Of a stretch of 33,883 nucleotides of DNA, positions 9,312 through 18,742 are shown in pieces. Every line of letters begins with the position of its first letter. Position 1 is the stretch's first letter. This DNA is from Parasitella parasitica NRRL 2501 (Eukaryota; Fungi; Mucoromycota). The stretch is from assembly GCA_025201805.1 (NCBI GenBank), contig MU619382.1:47311-81193 (forward strand), given 5' to 3'. A model generated the notes under the pieces. It ran no database searches. It saw only the letters and a program-made list of their open reading frames with translations, and was not told the origin of the DNA. The translations under genes were made by a program, and so were the position numbers.

Positions 9312-10507
9312 ATTGTTATGACGAAGAAAGAATTACGATGAAAAATTAATGGCTCCCAAGTTTCATGGCTGCTGATCTCAAAAATAGTCAAATAGAACTA
9401 CATAGCAAACAAGATGGCTCAGGGGGGGGGGGAAAGACATGCCATACAAGCATTTTCTACCAACATACCTAGAAAAAATAAAGATACACGGCTTGCAATT
9501 CAATGCAATGCATGCGTTTAAGGATACCACATAAAAACTTGTCAAAAGTGGCTAAATTCTCATTGCTTTTGTATCATGATACTGTTTCAATGAGGTATTG
9601 ACTACGCGTGATAACGCCTGCTTTTTTTTTTTTTTTTTTTTTTTNNNNNNNNNNNNNNNCAAATATGGTACTATCATGAGATAGTCATTATGAATTGTCG
9701 AGTAAACAGACAAAATAGATTTGAATTATAAAAGACTTGCAAAGAGGCTGCTCTTGGTCTAACGTGAGTGCACTGTCCGCCAAACAATAATTATTCGAAC
9801 TGCAAGGCTTCTGAGCATTGAGATACGTACACGTGCTATACAGTTAGTAGAGAGGAAATGCTATTATAGTAACATAATACATTCGGCTTTAACTTACATG
9901 TTACGATACTTTTTCTCTTCTTGATATTGGCTTAATTGATATTGCGAGCTTCTTCAAATTGTATCCCAAAGAGCGCTCAAGATTCCATAGTGCTCACACC
10001 TCTTAGCATGGATTTTCTACCTATAGGCAATGTCTTTTGTGAAGAATCTCATTGCATGTAATTTTCAGCTCTGTAATTTTCATCCGCACATCTGATAGCT
10101 TGGAATCTTGTCTAGTAGCCATCGGAACCAAGAGCGATATAAATACCTTGCACGCTGAATGCTCTTGCTGTCTAGCATTTAACAGATATGCTAGAACTAG
10201 CGGCATGCATGGACACCTACGTGGATTTCAAATGGAATGTTAATGCCTTCAAATTTCAAGCCGTAAAAAAAGTTTCTACATATCGTTTACCTTTGTGTGC
10301 TGCTGTAGCTAGCGAGCCTTGTATATATATATACAGTCGACATATGATAAAAATAAAGTCAAAAATAAAATATTCGGTGTACTGTACAAGAATCTATTTT
10401 GCTTTATTATCATATAAAGGACAAGAAAAAAAATGATGCAACTCATCACAAAAAGAAGGTGGAAGGTGGGGAAGGGGATTATAAAAGGTAGAAAACTCCT
10501 AGTGGTT

Positions 10508-11701
10508 TTAGTTGGCTTTCTTGGGAACCGGTAAAGTGTAAGAAGCAAAAAGCTCTTCGTCCTTCTGGATATCCTTGATGGCGGTAACTGAGACAGTGTC
10601 GTTTTCAAAAGTCAATTTGACATTGGCATTGTCGTCAGATTGGCCAATATAGGTCGAGATCTTGTAAAGACCGGCACCAATATATTTAGCATTGGGATCG
10701 GTCGATCTCACATGTTCATCGGAAGGACGAACTTGAGTTTCCTCTGTCGATGGAGCAGGGATACCATAAGCGTTGTACAGCATCTTGCCCTTGAGCATCA
10801 AATAGATCTCATCAGACAAAAATTCGCTAATACCTTGCACCTTGGGGCCGAGAACTTGCTTCAACAAGGCAATTTCAGCAGTAGATTCAGGGCTGGCAGT
10901 AGTCTCCAAATATCTAAAACGGTCGACATGATCCCAGGCACCAAAAGTAGTTTCGCCAACAGTTTCTGTTGTCTTTTGCTTCTTCAATTCCTCGGCAACC
11001 ATAGCAGACAAAAAGCGGGCAATCATGTAAGGATACTTTGTATTGCTAGTCTTGGAGCTTTCATGGAATTCCAAAGCAACGTTCTTCTCCTCTGCCTCAT
11101 CAGCTTCTTTGATCTCTGTAGATTTGTTGTGAGAACAGAGATATTGGTGGTAATCGGTATCAGCACTTTGACGACATTCCTCACTGCAAAAAGCGACTAG
11201 GTCACACTTGGGACATTCAACCTTGTTTTCGGAAGTGACAGGCTTCAAGCAAAAGTTACAATGAGATCCCTCCAATTCAGGATACAATGCAGATACGAGA
11301 GGACGCTCGGAAAAGATGACTTGATCCTGGGCAATGTCCTTGTCGGCAGCAAGAGAGCGACGAACGACAGGAGTGCCTTCCTCACTGACACCAGCAGGAA
11401 ATTCAGCCAGTTTAACATTGGTCTCCTTGGGAGGAAACTTTTCGTAATACAGGTTTTGGCGCTTCTGTTGCTATAAACGAATGAATTGGCATCGTTTTTT
11501 TTTTTATGAAAAAAAAACCTCCCCCCCTTCAAATCCCGGATAAATCGCTAATACTTACATCAAGAGCCATAATATTGATGATCATTTGGAAAACTGGTTC
11601 AGGGACAGTCTTTTGATAAATCATGATCAACTCCATAGGAGCTGGATAGACTCTCAAAGCCAGATAGAAGGGTAAAACAGCATCGTTGTAGAAAGCCTCG
11701 C
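10508..11701 (-). CDS. Tom20 (MAS20) receptor domain fused to a MYND zinc finger and split SET domain (SMYD-like); 5' exons presumably in the gap 11736-12205
   Basis: Exon 11701-11559 encodes GEAFYNDAVLPFYLALRVYPAPMELIMIYQKTVPEPVF (Tom20 core). A phase-0 intron 11558-11471 (GTAAGT..TAG) joins in frame to exon 11470-10508 (963 nt). That exon carries RRSLAADKDIAQDQVIFSERPLV (SET-N), CNFC..CPKC..CSEEC..H..C (MYND) and GAGLY..VTAIKDIQKDEELFASY (SET-C). Confidence 0.85.
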
Positions 11702-11735
11702 CTGATAGATGCATTATTCAATATGCAGCCATTTT

Positions 11736-12205
11736 NNNNNNNNNNNNNNNNNNNNNNNNNNNNNNNNNNNNNNNNNNNNNNNNNNNNNNNNNNNNNNNNN
11801 NNNNNNNNNNNNNNNNNNNNNNNNNNNNNNNNNNNNNNNNNNNNNNNNNNNNNNNNNNNNNNNNNNNNNNNNNNNNNNNNNNNNNNNNNNNNNNNNNNNN
11901 NNNNNNNNNNNNNNNNNNNNNNNNNNNNNNNNNNNNNNNNNNNNNNNNNNNNNNNNNNNNNNNNNNNNNNNNNNNNNNNNNNNNNNNNNNNNNNNNNNNN
12001 NNNNNNNNNNNNNNNNNNNNNNNNNNNNNNNNNNNNNNNNNNNNNNNNNNNNNNNNNNNNNNNNNNNNNNNNNNNNNNNNNNNNNNNNNNNNNNNNNNNN
12101 NNNNNNNNNNNNNNNNNNNNNNNNNNNNNNNNNNNNNNNNNNNNNNNNNNNNNNNNNNNNNNNNNNNNNNNNNNNNNNNNNNNNNNNNNNNNNNNNNNNN
12201 NNNNN
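11736..12205. other. Assembly gap (470 N)
   Basis: Run of N. A second, short gap lies at 9645-9659. Confidence 1.
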
Positions 12206-15132: not shown

Positions 15133-15857
15133 ATGAAATCTTCCACTATTGCATTGATTGCTACCGGTGTAATTGCCTCTGCCGGCCTCGGTTATTTAGT
15201 CTACTTTGACTCTATGAGACGTAACAATCCTGAATTCAGAAAACAATTGAGTAAGAAAAAGGAAGAAAGAAAAAAAAAAAAAAAAGACATGGGTGTTAAT
15301 GTAGACTAAAACATAAATCTCATCTACCCATCAAATTCAGGACGTGAGCGCAAAAATGCAGCAAAGGCATCCCAGAACGCCGAAAAGAACGAAAAGGAAT
15401 CCAGACTACAGTTAATTGAAAACGTTATTGTTGAATGCTCAAAGGAAGAATTGCCTACTTCTGCTGAGGCAAAGGAAAAGTACTTCATGGAGCAAGTTGC
15501 TGCTGGTGAAGCTTTATGTGGAAAAGGTATGGGATTTACTGCAGTGACATGACACGGATTTTGTTCTTATGCTGTGTGGTTTAGGTCCTGCTTACTATGA
15601 CGAGGCTGTTTTACCCTTCTACAAGGCACTCAAGGTGTACCCTGCCCCCATGGAATTGGTCATGATATACCAAAAGACGATCCCTGAGCCTGTATTCAGC
15701 ACCATCACCACTATTCTAGCCATTGAGGTAAGTCGTTTGCTGGATAACAGATGACATGCAAACTAAAAAGCTATGACAGCAAAAGGCAATGGAAGGGCAG
15801 CAAGCAGAGACTCCTGAAGCAGCAGCAGCCTCTGCTACTGGCGTTGATATCGAGTAG
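15133..15857 (+). CDS. TOM20: Mitochondrial import receptor Tom20 (canonical short form)
   Basis: N-terminal TM followed by GYLVYFDSMRRNNPEFRKQL; KEKYFMEQVAAGEAL; FYKALKVYPAPMELVMIYQKTIPEPVF. Exons 15133-15250, 15341-15526, 15585-15727, 15780-15857. Confidence 0.95.
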
Positions 15858-16049
15858 GCACTTTGGTAGACTGATTGTACTTTTATTATGAATAATTTTA
15901 GATATATATTTGTGTATGTGCACGGAAATCAATTGAAGGTTCTCTGATTGCAGTCTCCATGTGATACCAACAGAGATGCTCAAGTAAAAGCAGTGACGAT
16001 ATTAGCATTATTTCTGTTTCTCTTTCTTTTCTTGTTTCATGAATTTTCA

Positions 16050-16878
16050 ATGGCACATTTCGATAAAGCAGAATCTATTGCGACAAACACACTATTGATC
16101 CCTGATGTGCCAGCCAACTTTTTTGGCTGCGATGATGCGATGTTGATACTGCATGACGCATTTGCATCGTTTGGCTCTATATATACCTTTGTCCCTATGA
16201 AGGGATTTCGAAGAGTGATGGTCATTTTCCAAGAGACTGCGCATGCCATGAATGCAAAGAAATCACTAGATAAGCATTCCATCGTGTACGGAGAAAGAGA
16301 GCCATTTCCTGAGATTGTTACTTTTGCAAAGATAGATGTAAATGGTGTGCAAGTGTGGAGAGATGCTGGCAAGGTAGTGCTGCAATTGCGAGTGTACTAC
16401 GGACAGGTAAAGTTTTTATTACTTGCCCAAGTTGAAAACTTACACATTCAGCCGGCAGCATTTTGCCATAAACGTAGACCCAAAATCCAACTCTTTACAA
16501 GTTCCACAGTTTCAGCGAAATCTGCTTATTTCCCCACCAGGCTCGCCATTTGACGGGTGGGAGCAAATCGAAGAAGATGCGCCTAATCAAGCCGTATTAG
16601 CCTCGGACTTGATTCATGCTGCCGAGATATCAGATTACGAATTGGACGATGATGAGCTGGAACTCGAGGCTATTCACAAGGAGAAGATGGAGATAAAAAA
16701 GCAACAGAAAGCTATATCAATTGTTTGCTCAAAAGGATTTGAACAGCCAGAGCATTTACCATCCATCACGGTGCAAGATTGGGACGGACACGTTACACTG
16801 GAAAGTAAAGACAGCACAACGAAAAAGAAGACTGTGAACGACATTGTGCCAACAGCAATGCCACCACGAAAAATTTAG
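16050..16878 (+). CDS. RCN1: Calcipressin / regulator of calcineurin (RCAN family); exons 16050-16406, 16459-16878
   Basis: N-terminal RRM-like TNTLLI..MKGFRRVMVIF..LRVYYG; LLISPPGSPFDGWE (FLISPP signature); PSITVQ (PxIxIT-like); C-terminal PTAMPP. Confidence 0.92.
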
Positions 16879-16948: not shown

Positions 16949-18742
16949 CTATGATTTGATACAACTTCCAGGAATTGGGTCTTCTCTTTCAACTGGAGTA
17001 GCAGGAGGGGTTGAAGCTTGGGCCACGGAAGCAATAATGGGCATAGCAGCTGCAGCTGTGCTGGAGGCAGTATTACGGTTATGGGCCATGTGGGCTTTGA
17101 CTAAATGACCAGCAGCCAAAGCAGCACAAAGGGAGAGTTCACCAGCCATGACAGCAGCGCAAATAATGCGGGCAAGACGACGAGCATTGGCCCCAGGCTC
17201 AGTGGGATGAGGACCACGAACACCCAGGAAATCTAGCATGGCTTGCTGAGGAGGTAGGATAGTGCCGCCGCCAATTGTACCTACTTCGATGCAAGGCATA
17301 GTACACGAAATGTTCAAGTCCTTTTCATTATTGACCGCCTTCATCAACGTAATGCAGTTGGAGCTTTCGACATTTTGCGCTGGATCTTGTCCTGTAGCAA
17401 GATAGACGGCGGTCAGGATATTAGCCGCATGAGCATTGAATCCACCAACAGATCCAGCCATGGCAGAACCGACCAAATTTTTCGAGATGTTAAGCTCCAC
17501 CAAGGCAGAAACGGATGTTTTAAGCACTTTCTCGACAACAGAGCCAGGGATAACCGCTTCTGCTACGACAGACTTGCCACGACCTTCAATCCAGTTGATA
17601 GCAGCAGGTTTTTTATCAGTGCAGTAATTGCCAGATAGAGAGATAATTTGCATTTCAGGATATCTTTCGGCAATCTTGGACAATGCCTTTTCGCAACCTT
17701 TTGAAATCATGTTCATGCCCATAGCGTCACCTGTGGTTGTAGAGAAACGAATGTACATCAAACAGCCAGCAAGAGCAACCTTCATTTTACGAACACGGGC
17801 AAAGCGAGATGTGGAATTAAACGCCTCAGTTACTACCTTTTCTCCCTCCTGTTCAATCCAACGTTTGCAATCTGCTGCACGAAGAATATTGGGAAACTCA
17901 ACACAGGGTCCACGAGTCATACCGTCTGCAATAACAATGGTTGTAGCTCCACCTCCAGCATTGATGGCTTTACAGCCTCTAGCTGCTGAAGCAACTAGGC
18001 AACCTTCTGTAGTAGCCATGGGAATATGAATAAGATCACCGTCAATATTCAGTGGGCCTAGACAGGTGAGTGACAGGATGTGTTTGTCAGTATACCTTCC
18101 CATGTTTATCTGTTTATGTTTGTGCTTACCTGCTACACCTACTGGAATAGGCATGTAGCCAATCACGTTTTCACAACATGCACCCATTACCTTATCATAA
18201 TGATAATTCTTGACAGGAAGTAGGCTACCTTCCAGCGATTTTGTAATAGAATCACGCGAAACCAAAGCCCTACGGATATGCACAGCGCGTTCGAAATCGC
18301 CAAGTACCTTTTCAAGAGCGTAGGCAGCCATCTTTCCACTTTGAACAACAGAGATGATCTCTTCGTCTGTCAGTACTTCAGGAGTGCCGATTAAGCTGAA
18401 AACTTCATCTAAAGGACGCACAATATCAGAGTGGCGGTGATGGTTCTGCTGTTGTTGTTGTTGTTGTTGCTGGTGATGGTGATGGTGATGGGTTTTCTTG
18501 TTAATCTTGGCAATGGGAGGAGACGAGATCCTTCTTTCCTTTTTCGCTGGTTCTTGCACAGGCACTTGGACCTTTTCAATAACTTTTTGTACAACTATTT
18601 TTGGCTGTTGTTTGGCAACGTTGAATAGATAGGTATTTAGGAACAGAGAAATAACGAGCGCAATAGTCAGCCATTTGGATATAACGGGATGTTGAGTATA
18701 GACAGTATAGATATCGAATAAACTCTCGAAAGGCTTCATCAT
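16949..18742 (-). CDS. HMG1: HMG-CoA reductase (class I): catalytic domain plus one TM helix; intron 18129-18058; 5' end uncertain
   Basis: [106 protein letters not shown]. Confidence 0.95.
18431..18490 (-). repeat. CAC/CAT and CAA/CAG trinucleotide tract encoding H6-Q9 in the HMGR linker
   Basis: [21 protein letters not shown]. Confidence 0.9.

What the first reader, a model, noticed from the sequence alone, without database searches (positions are those of the whole stretch)
10508..11701. Tom20 import receptor fused to a SMYD-like MYND-SET module
A clear Tom20 core exon splices in frame to a 320-aa exon with a split SET domain and an intact MYND finger. Tom20 is the N-anchored, cytosol-facing presequence receptor of the TOM complex (established). 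The fusion would place a methyltransferase-fold/MYND interaction module at the mitochondrial import site, where it could bind or modify precursors, chaperones or ribosomes (inference; animal SMYD proteins interact with Hsp90). I recall MAS20+SET architectures in automated annotations of some fungi but know of no functional study.
Basis: partly seen in the sequence, partly recalled or inferred. Interest (0 to 1): 0.85.

Follow-up and report, generated by a model that had tools for sequence, protein, structure and literature searches.

The report
Tom20 receptor fused to dead SMYD domain
This Mucorales gene really does join the mitochondrial import receptor Tom20 to a SMYD-type SET/MYND module in one spliced mRNA, but the architecture is old, widespread in non-ascomycete fungi and already catalogued, and this copy has lost the methyltransferase's catalytic motifs.

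Summary
On the minus strand, exon 11701-11559 is the C-terminal core of a Tom20/MAS20 domain (Pfam E 6.5e-13). An 88-nt GT..AG intron joins it in frame to exon 11470-10508, 320 aa with a split SET domain, an intact MYND finger and a SMYD2/3-like predicted fold.

It is one gene:
- A public 1498-nt contig skips exactly that intron and runs 355 nt on into the N gap.
- The paralog in the same genome encodes both parts in one continuous exon.
- More than 30 Mucorales gene models, and many from other fungal phyla and from Sphaeroforma, show MAS20+SET(+MYND).

The architecture is not new. PMC9692433 lists it as SET 'Group 25', absent from Ascomycota, with no function assigned.

New here:
- All 35 Mucorales copies lack the HxC of the NHSC motif (here GQSD) and the post-SET CxCxxC. 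Most non-Mucorales copies keep both.
- The domain is nevertheless under strong purifying selection (dN/dS 0.046).
- A canonical 174-aa Tom20 lies head-to-head at 15133-15857, with its last intron at the same position.

Best reading: an outer-membrane-anchored Tom20 paralog carrying a pseudo-methyltransferase/MYND binding module. Notes s1-786811 and s1-786880, written earlier in this scan on this same stretch, agree.

The parts
11736..12205 (.). Run of N (470 letters) that hides the 5' exons of the fusion gene: start codon, transmembrane anchor, basic stretch and first half of the Tom20 domain.
   Evidence: One search shows the N run. The spliced contig continues 355 nt beyond 11703 into it, and the first 30 of those letters encode VAAGESLCN(R), as in ortholog P0001. 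In M. circinelloides the ATG lies 469 nt upstream of the equivalent exon.
11559..11701 (-). Exon encoding the C-terminal core of the Tom20 (MAS20) receptor domain (..GEAFYNDAVLPFYLALRVYPAPMELIMIYQKTVPEPVFQMIINIMALD).
   Evidence: Pfam MAS20 E 6.5e-13, profile 94-131/132. Fungal Tom20 9i7s_K E 3.4e-7. Covered by the spliced contig. dN/dS 0.011 against M. circinelloides.
11471..11558 (-). 88-nt intron (GTAAGT...TAG) at the Tom20/SMYD junction. It falls between codons (phase 0).
   Evidence: Sequence. Skipped exactly in contig X1, 'skips 88, CT..AC' on the + strand. An intron at this position is also present in M. circinelloides and Lichtheimia, and absent in the paralog on contig C30.
10508..11470 (-). 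Terminal exon: 320-aa SMYD-like core (linker helix, N-SET, MYND, I-SET, C-SET) plus the TAA stop at 10510-10508. There is no post-SET and no C-terminal lobe.
   Evidence: 91% identical to M. circinelloides P0001. dN/dS 0.046.
11135..11260 (-). MYND zinc finger, C-x2-C-x11-C-x2-C-x5-C-x3-C-x8-H-x3-C, with all eight ligands present.
   Evidence: Translation. Pfam zf-MYND E 3.6e-5. C71 C74 C86 C89 C95 C99 H108 C112 are invariant in 34 Mucorales sequences.
10634..10645 (-). Degenerate cofactor/pseudoknot motif: GQSD where SMYD enzymes have NHSC.
   Evidence: Translation. Alignment to SMYD2 'LMNHSCCPNV'. 0 of 35 Mucorales copies keep HxC, against 39 of 51 other fusions.
10473..10507 (-). The part of the 3' UTR that is present in the spliced contig.
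   Evidence: The contig piece ends at 10473.
15133..15857 (+). Divergently oriented neighbour: a canonical stand-alone Tom20 of 174 aa in four exons (15133-15250, 15341-15526, 15585-15727, 15780-15857). Its last intron is at the same position as the junction intron of the fusion, and its last exon is a 25-aa tail.
   Evidence: Its exons match protein P0212, an annotated 174-aa Tom20 on a contig of 81,193 bp, which is this window's contig. Pfam MAS20 E 8.4e-44.

Best explanation
The gene encodes one protein of about 470 aa. It has, in order: an N-terminal signal-anchor helix with a basic stretch, a Tom20 presequence-receptor domain, a helix that runs through the exon junction, and a SMYD-type core (N-SET, MYND finger, I-SET, C-SET) that stops just after the SET domain.

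It is one of three Tom20 genes in this genome, which is probably Parasitella parasitica. The others are a canonical stand-alone Tom20 next door and a second fusion paralog on another contig.

Shown:
- the splice and the single reading frame;
- the domain identities;
- conservation of the gene across Mucorales and strong purifying selection on both halves;
- loss of the HxC motif and of the post-SET zinc cluster across Mucorales.

Inferred:
- The protein sits in the mitochondrial outer membrane, anchored by its N terminus and facing the cytosol, like Tom20.
- Its SET domain no longer transfers methyl groups. It works as a binding module: the former substrate cleft plus a MYND finger, which in animal SMYDs binds PxLxP motifs.
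- That module recruits or holds cytosolic partners or particular precursors at or near the TOM entry site, alongside the canonical Tom20.
- In other fungal lineages, where HSC and CxCxxC are retained, the same architecture is probably an active lysine methyltransferase at the mitochondrial surface.
For: Single gene:
- A contig with 0 mismatches skips exactly 11471-11558 and runs 355 nt further upstream.
- Paralog L001 has the Tom20 core and SET-MYND in one continuous exon.
- About 35 Mucorales models of 446-560 aa carry MAS20+SET(+MYND).

Domains:
- Pfam on the exons and on the full-length ortholog, where MAS20 scores E 1e-44 from residue 13.
- Tom20 structures are found by the family profile.
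- The predicted SMYD fold has pLDDT 88 and Foldseek E 1e-13 to SMYD2/3/1.
- The full-length ortholog model (pLDDT 85.5, pTM 0.75) has helix 5-33 and helix 138-162 running across the junction.

Pseudo-enzyme:
- GQSD stands in place of NHSC, and the protein ends 9 aa after ELFASY.
- 0 of 35 Mucorales copies have HxC or CxCxxC. Among other fusions, 39 of 51 have HxC and 36 of 51 have both.

Still functional:
- dN/dS is 0.046 over the SMYD exon, 0.051 in its C-SET quarter and 0.011 in the Tom20 exon, at dS about 1.
- The MYND ligands are invariant.

Canonical Tom20 coexists:
-.
- Stand-alone Tom20s of 161-184 aa occur in about 30 Mucorales genera.
Against: - No localisation, interaction or enzymatic data exist.
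- The N-terminal anchor of this very gene is hidden in the N run.
- The run that gave the contig is only guessed to be RNA, although a GT..AG-bounded skip argues for cDNA.
- A contig does not prove that one molecule spans all exons.
- Several catalytic-core features survive: the Tyr of ELxxSY (Y311) and the I-SET Asn (N233) are invariant, and two Mucorales members keep the His (GHS). An atypical activity is therefore not excluded.
- The strong conservation of the C-SET region would also fit retained cofactor binding.
- The MYND-PxLxP analogy rests on my memory of animal SMYDs and was not tested.
Confidence: 0.6

Rival explanations
1. The Mucorales SET domain is still an active, atypical methyltransferase. 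It would methylate precursors, chaperones or TOM subunits at the import site and compensate for the lost NHSC/post-SET elements with other residues.
For: - Y311 (catalytic Tyr position) and N233 are invariant, and C-SET is very well conserved.
- Two members retain His.
- Relatives outside Mucorales look catalytically complete.
Against: - The H of NH and the C of NHSC are lost in 33 and 35 of the 35 Mucorales copies respectively, and no post-SET CxCxxC remains.
- The protein ends 9 residues after the SET Tyr, so the lid of the lysine channel and cofactor pocket seen in SMYD structures is missing.
- Similar degenerations occur independently in other lineages, such as the Smittium group, P0103 and P0118. 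That suggests the family has a function that does not need catalysis.
Confidence: 0.15
2. The Tom20 part serves only as an outer-membrane tether. The protein does not take part in import and instead acts as a surface scaffold, for example for signalling, organelle contacts or quality control, through its MYND/SET module.
For: - A canonical Tom20 exists in the same genome and across Mucorales, so receptor duty is covered.
- Two fusion paralogs have been kept since before the Mucorales radiation.
Against: - The receptor core, not just the anchor, is under the strongest constraint (dN/dS 0.011).
- The hydrophobic positions that align with the rat and human Tom20 helices stay hydrophobic (calling these the groove residues rests on my memory of the structure).
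- A mere tether would not need them.
Confidence: 0.2
3. Artefact: two neighbouring genes (Tom20 and a SMYD-like gene) wrongly merged, or a misassembly at the gap.
For: An N run interrupts the gene. The only expression evidence is a contig from a run of uncertain type.
Against: - The in-frame GT..AG splice is seen in the contig.
- The paralog has both domains in one uninterrupted ORF.
- The same architecture appears in independent assemblies of more than 40 genera from six fungal phyla and one ichthyosporean.
- The stand-alone Tom20 next door has its own separate terminal exon.
Confidence: 0.02

Closest known systems
Fungal SET-domain 'Group 25' (MAS20 upstream of SET), Phylogenomic and Evolutionary Analyses Reveal Diversifications of SET-Domain Proteins in Fungi, J Fungi 2022, PMC9692433
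   Same: Same architecture and same distribution (none in Ascomycota). The window's gene is a Mucorales member. Its M. circinelloides ortholog is a deposited 471-aa model with MAS20+SET.
   Different: The paper records only the domain combination. It gives no transcript evidence, does not note the MYND finger for this group, and makes no statement on catalytic residues or function. Here the Mucorales branch is shown to lack HxC and post-SET.
Animal SMYD1/2/3 lysine methyltransferases (for example PDB 3TG4, 3MEK, 3N71)
   Same: Split SET domain with a MYND finger inserted after N-SET, a helical I-SET, and the same fold over about 300 aligned columns (Foldseek E 1e-13, TM 0.58 normalised to the query).
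   Different: 15-18% identity. It has no post-SET zinc cluster and no C-terminal helical lobe, NHSC is replaced by GQSD, and it carries an N-terminal Tom20 domain and membrane anchor that no SMYD has.
Canonical fungal and animal Tom20 (PDB 9I7S chain K; rat/human 1OM2, 7VC9)
   Same: N-terminal anchor, basic stretch and receptor domain. The family profile matches 9i7s_K over positions 7-160 (E 1.9e-36). The motif YPxPxELIxIYQKTVPxPVF is conserved.
   Different: Canonical Tom20 ends in a short acidic or low-complexity tail after the last helix. Here that tail exon is replaced by a 320-aa SMYD-like exon at the same intron position.
Yeast Set5/Set6 (fungal SMYD-like SET proteins, Groups 21/26/27 of PMC9692433)
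   Same: They fall in the same cluster of fungal SET proteins (Cluster 3) in that paper.
   Different: They are soluble nuclear/cytosolic proteins without a Tom20 domain. Set5 is an active H4 methyltransferase according to the paper's citation. No direct comparison was run here.

Membership tests
Tom20 / MAS20 (PF02064) | Significant match to the MAS20 receptor-domain profile | tested here: met
   Exon A scores E 6.5e-13, 49 bits against a cut-off of 27. Ortholog P0001 scores 152 bits over profile positions 1-131.
Tom20 / MAS20 (PF02064) | N-terminal transmembrane signal-anchor followed by a basic stretch | tested here: inconclusive
   Hidden in the N run 11736-12205 of the window. It is present in the 91%-identical ortholog (hydrophobic residues about 8-27, then DHKRRNDP..KKK; helix 5-33 in the model).
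Tom20 / MAS20 (PF02064) | Outer-membrane localisation, association with Tom22/Tom40, presequence binding | not testable with these tools
   Needs localisation, co-purification and peptide-binding experiments.
SMYD lysine methyltransferases | SET domain split by a MYND zinc finger; SMYD N-lobe fold | tested here: met
   SET spans residues 39-311 and MYND 71-112 of exon B. The eight zinc ligands are invariant. SMYD2/3/1 are the top structural matches.
SMYD lysine methyltransferases | NHSC cofactor/pseudoknot motif | tested here: not met
   GQSD at 10645-10634 aligns with NHSC of SMYD2. 0 of 35 Mucorales members keep HxC.
SMYD lysine methyltransferases | Post-SET cysteine cluster (CxCxxC) closing the active site | tested here: not met
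   The protein stops 9 aa after ELFASY. The cluster is present in 0 of 35 Mucorales copies and in 36 of 51 non-Mucorales fusions.
SMYD lysine methyltransferases | C-terminal helical (TPR-like) lobe | tested here: not met
   No sequence follows the SET domain. Foldseek alignments cover about 300 of 428 target residues.
SMYD lysine methyltransferases | SAM-dependent lysine methylation | not testable with these tools
   Needs a biochemical assay.
Fungal SET 'Group 25' (MAS20-SET fusion) | MAS20 domain upstream of SET in one protein; found outside Ascomycota | tested here: met
   Spliced contig, single-exon paralog, orthologs, paper.

The most novel reading that the evidence does not exclude
The Tom20-SMYD fusion, not the short Tom20 of yeast and Neurospora, may be the ancestral fungal (perhaps opisthokont) form of the receptor. 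On this reading it was an active lysine methyltransferase built into the import receptor, methylating precursors or import factors as they arrive, and it is still the only Tom20 in lineages such as Mortierellomycota and Zoopagomycota. The stand-alone Tom20 of Mucorales would then be a secondary derivative made by duplication and replacement of the SMYD exon at the shared intron. The Mucorales fusions would have become non-catalytic binding receptors once a free Tom20 existed.
Probability: 0.25. Interest if true: 0.8.

Novelty: new member of a known kind. Interest (0 to 1): 0.5.

Why it matters
Models of mitochondrial protein import rest almost wholly on ascomycete and animal Tom20, a short receptor with no enzymatic partner.

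This gene documents the following, with transcript support:
- Mucorales, and by homology most other non-ascomycete fungal phyla and an ichthyosporean, carry a Tom20 welded to a SMYD-type module.
- Outside Mucorales the module looks catalytically complete. That would put a lysine methyltransferase at the entry gate of mitochondria.
- Inside Mucorales it has decayed to a conserved pseudo-enzyme next to a free Tom20.

This gives a natural active/inactive pair for asking what the module does. Mucorales are genetically tractable (M. lusitanicus) and medically relevant, so the question can be tested.

The value lies in the biology still to be found. The architecture itself is not new, because it is already in the databases and in one phylogenomic paper.

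Tried and rejected
- Misassembly or two-gene read-through: rejected.
- A bacterial-style ORF reading of the region is meaningless here. The window is eukaryotic, with GT..AG introns.
- My first coordinates for the exons of the stand-alone Tom20 were off by one or two bases. I corrected them by hand and checked them against P0212.
- Literature: four full-text searches (Tom20/MYND/SET/Mucorales; MAS20+SET domain+fusion; SMYD+Tom20+fungi; MAS20+MYND) gave one relevant paper and no functional study.
- The look-up of sequencing runs returned a single run of uncertain type, so there is no independent second study and no strand or abundance information.
Only quick trees are reported.
- The idea that fused and stand-alone Tom20 domains form two ancient separate clades is not supported. 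Tom20 domains group by taxon instead.
- A conserved head-to-head arrangement with the free Tom20: present in M. circinelloides (about 7.5 kb apart), and no MAS20 gene within 8 kb of the fusion in Lichtheimia ornata. It is therefore not a general feature.
- No complex prediction was run, because I claim no specific binding pair.
Exons were searched by reference, and the full-length view comes from ortholog P0001.

Full report
**What is in the sequence.** The feature lies on the minus strand of a eukaryotic (Mucorales) window.

- From 11701 down to 11559 there is an exon reading ..GEAFYNDAVLPFYLALRVYPAPMELIMIYQKTVPEPVFQMIINIMALD.
- It matches the C-terminal end of Pfam MAS20 (E 6.5e-13, 49 bits against a cut-off of 27, profile positions 94-131 of 132). 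Its best solved relative is a fungal Tom20 (9i7s_K, E 3.4e-7).
- A GTAAGT...TAG intron of 88 nt follows (11558-11471).
- Then comes an open frame of 320 codons from 11470 to the TAA at 10510-10508.
- That frame scores SET (E 4.9e-7, spanning residues 39-311) and zf-MYND (E 3.6e-5, residues 71-112), both above Pfam's cut-offs.
- By sequence it finds only SMYD2, SMYD3 and SMYD1 among solved structures.
- An AlphaFold model built on 34 homologs is confident (pLDDT 88, pTM 0.87). Its best Foldseek matches are SMYD2/3/1 (E about 1e-13, about 300 aligned columns, TM 0.58 on the query).

**Is it one gene?** Three independent lines say yes.

- **Spliced contig.** The one public run that holds this stretch yields a 1498-nt contig with no mismatches. 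It covers 10473-11470 and 11559-11703 and skips exactly the 88-nt intron, with GT..AG ends on the coding strand. It then continues for 355 nt into the N run. The first 30 letters of that continuation encode VAAGESLCN and join in frame to (R)GEAFY, exactly as in the ortholog. The apparent overlap to 11703 is the usual AG ambiguity, and the exon starts at 11701 behind a CAG acceptor.
  - Caveats: the run is only guessed to be RNA, and a contig is not a single molecule. Still, a precise GT..AG deletion at depth about 900 is what cDNA gives.
- **Single-exon paralog.** The same genome has a paralog on contig C30. There the Tom20 core and the SET-MYND part sit in one uninterrupted exon (L001 1501-2514), so no splicing is needed to fuse them.
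- **Orthologs.** A protein search with the SET exon alone returned about 35 Mucorales gene models of 446-560 aa whose precomputed Pfam content is MAS20 + SET (+ MYND). The best is a 471-aa Mucor circinelloides protein at 91% identity.

**Identity of the genome.** The paralog is 99-100% identical to a Parasitella parasitica protein (P0043). The neighbouring free Tom20 matches exon for exon a deposited 174-aa protein, with a name beginning 'Para', on a contig of 81,193 bp, which is this window's contig. The genome is therefore Parasitella parasitica or very close. The fusion gene itself seems to lack a deposited model in this assembly, presumably because the N run 11736-12205 removes its first exons.

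**Anatomy of the protein.** The full-length view comes from ortholog P0001.

- Residues about 8-27 are hydrophobic and are followed by DHKRRNDP and a lysine-rich stretch, the Tom20 type of signal anchor.
- Pfam MAS20 covers residues 13-145 (E 1e-44).
- In the full-length model (pLDDT 85.5, pTM 0.75) helix 5-33 is the anchor. Helix 138-162 runs straight through the exon junction into the SMYD part, so the two halves are connected by a helix rather than a floppy linker.
- The SMYD part has N-SET strands, a MYND finger whose eight zinc ligands are invariant in all 34 aligned Mucorales sequences (C71 C74 C86 C89 C95 C99 H108 C112), a helical I-SET with long invariant runs, and C-SET.

**Catalytic competence.**

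- Where SMYD2 has LMNHSCCPNV, this protein has YIGQSDDNAN.
- It ends nine residues after the ELFASY motif, so it has neither the post-SET CxCxxC zinc cluster nor the C-terminal lobe of SMYD enzymes.
- I aligned 86 fusion proteins to a profile of the SMYD part. None of the 35 Mucorales members has H-x-C at the NHSC position or a CxCxxC in the C-terminal half; only two retain the His.
- Of the 51 members from elsewhere, 39 keep HxC and 36 keep both elements, for example ..HSC.. followed by FKCMCPLC or FACECERC.
- The Tyr of ELxxSY and the I-SET Asn remain invariant.
- The domain is not decaying. Against M. circinelloides, dN/dS is 0.046 over the exon at dS about 1.0, and 0.051 in the quarter that holds the degenerate motif. 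It is 0.011 in the Tom20 exon.

This is the signature of a pseudo-enzyme kept for a non-catalytic job. Similar motif losses in a few other branches (the Smittium group, P0103, P0118) point the same way.

**Context and paralogs.** Searching the whole assembly with MAS20 finds three genes: this one, the C30 paralog, and a third at 15133-15857 on the plus strand, head-to-head with the fusion.

- The third gene is a canonical four-exon, 174-aa Tom20.
- Its last intron falls after ..TILAIE, the position homologous to ..IMALD in the fusion. Its last exon is a 25-aa tail instead of the SMYD exon. The two genes differ essentially by their terminal exon.
- The junction intron is shared by M. circinelloides and Lichtheimia and was lost in the paralog.
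- M. circinelloides also has the free Tom20 divergently upstream, about 7.5 kb away. Lichtheimia ornata has no MAS20 gene within 8 kb of the fusion.
- Free Tom20s of 161-184 aa are present in about 30 Mucorales genera.
- In a quick LG+G4 tree of Tom20 domains, all Mucorales copies (free, fusion 1 and fusion 2) form one clade (SH-aLRT 99) apart from the Tom20 domains of other fungi. Within it the free genes (85) and fusion 2 (97) are each one group. A larger quick tree likewise groups domains by taxon rather than by architecture.
- This fits duplications at the base of Mucorales. Because the nearest outgroups sampled are fused, it hints that the free gene derives from a fused one. The trees are quick and unrooted and rest on about 150 columns, so this is a lead, not a result.

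**Distribution and literature.** A profile search of 1.8 billion representatives found 178 proteins at E below 1e-30. Of the 191 proteins then in hand, 102 match both halves, including most of the roughly 50 new representatives that lie outside the close Mucorales set. Named examples:

- Mortierellomycota: Podila, Mortierella, Haplosporangium.
- Calcarisporiella.
- Zoopagomycota: Basidiobolus, Piptocephalis, Dimargaris, Tieghemiomyces, Dispira, Smittium.
- Blastocladiomycota: Paraphysoderma, Allomyces.
- Chytridiomycota: Fimicolochytrium.
- Agaricomycetes: Botryobasidium, Tulasnella, Rhizoctonia, Galerina, Sphaerobolus, Tephrocybe.
- The ichthyosporean Sphaeroforma arctica.

Pfam confirms MAS20 and SET above cut-off in representatives of each group, including Sphaeroforma.

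Full-text searches found one relevant paper. PMC9692433 (J Fungi 2022) states that its SET 'Group 25' carries MAS20 upstream of SET and is absent from Ascomycota, and assigns no function. Three other searches found nothing. The architecture is therefore known at catalogue level and functionally unexplored.

Among the 120 best Tom20-profile hits, the members from Mortierellomycota, Zoopagomycota and Blastocladiomycota are all fused. Free Tom20s come from Mucorales, Ascomycota, Pucciniomycotina, Malassezia and Synchytrium. This is suggestive, but not proof, that the fusion is the only Tom20 in some phyla.

**How it most likely works.**

- Shown: one mRNA and one frame; a Tom20 receptor domain under very strong constraint; an intact MYND finger; a SET domain without the cofactor/pseudoknot His-Cys and without post-SET, yet under strong constraint; and coexistence with a canonical Tom20.
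- Inferred from established knowledge of Tom20 (an N-anchored, cytosol-facing presequence receptor): the protein is anchored in the outer membrane with everything after residue about 30 in the cytosol.
- Inferred from SET enzymology and my recollection of animal SMYDs (MYND binds PxLxP motifs; SMYDs engage Hsp90): the SMYD core here binds rather than modifies. It would serve as an extra docking surface that brings particular clients, chaperones or ribosome-associated factors to the import site, or holds particular precursors there.

I put about 0.6 on this composite. The alternatives are a still-active atypical enzyme (0.15), a pure tether with an import-independent role (0.2) and an artefact (0.02).

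**Verdict.** The interpretation needs two corrections: the methyltransferase is almost certainly dead in this lineage, and a normal Tom20 sits next door. The kind is already catalogued, so novelty is modest, but the biology behind it is untouched and testable.

Notes s1-786811 and s1-786880, written earlier in this scan on this same stretch, reached the same two points, and I verified both here.

Noticed in passing
window 15133-15857 (+): Canonical stand-alone Tom20 (174 aa, four exons), head-to-head with the fusion gene. Its last intron is at the same position as the fusion's junction intron, so the two genes differ by their terminal exon.
   Followed up: yes
G000 contig C30, locus L001 1301-2791: Second Tom20-SMYD fusion paralog, 99-100% identical to Parasitella parasitica P0043. 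It has no intron at the domain junction. Its motif at the NHSC position is also degenerate (FVGKSD), and the protein ends at the SET Tyr.
   Followed up: partly
window 11736-12205: A 470-letter N run sits exactly where the first exons of the fusion gene should be. The gene appears to have no deposited model in this assembly, although both neighbours and the paralog do.
   Followed up: partly
window 15948-16878 (+): Calcipressin (RCAN) gene directly downstream of the free Tom20. Two overlapping ORFs both hit PF04847 (E 4e-7 and 4.6e-18), so it probably contains an intron or a frame change near 16420-16550.
   Followed up: partly
window 16949-18742 (-): A 597-aa ORF with the HMG-CoA reductase catalytic domain (PF00368, E 1.6e-139) and only a short N-terminal region in this ORF. 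Upstream exons were not examined.
   Followed up: no
proteins P0100 (Synchytrium microbalum, 329 aa, SET only) and P0176 (S. endobioticum, 256 aa, Tom20 only): In Synchytrium the two halves appear as separate gene models. This could be a true fission or a split annotation.
   Followed up: no
protein P0166 (Sphaeroforma arctica, 489 aa): An ichthyosporean protein has the same MAS20 + MYND + SET order, with NHSC and a post-SET CxCxxC. This suggests the fusion predates Fungi or was transferred. It sits on a very long branch in the tree.
   Followed up: partly
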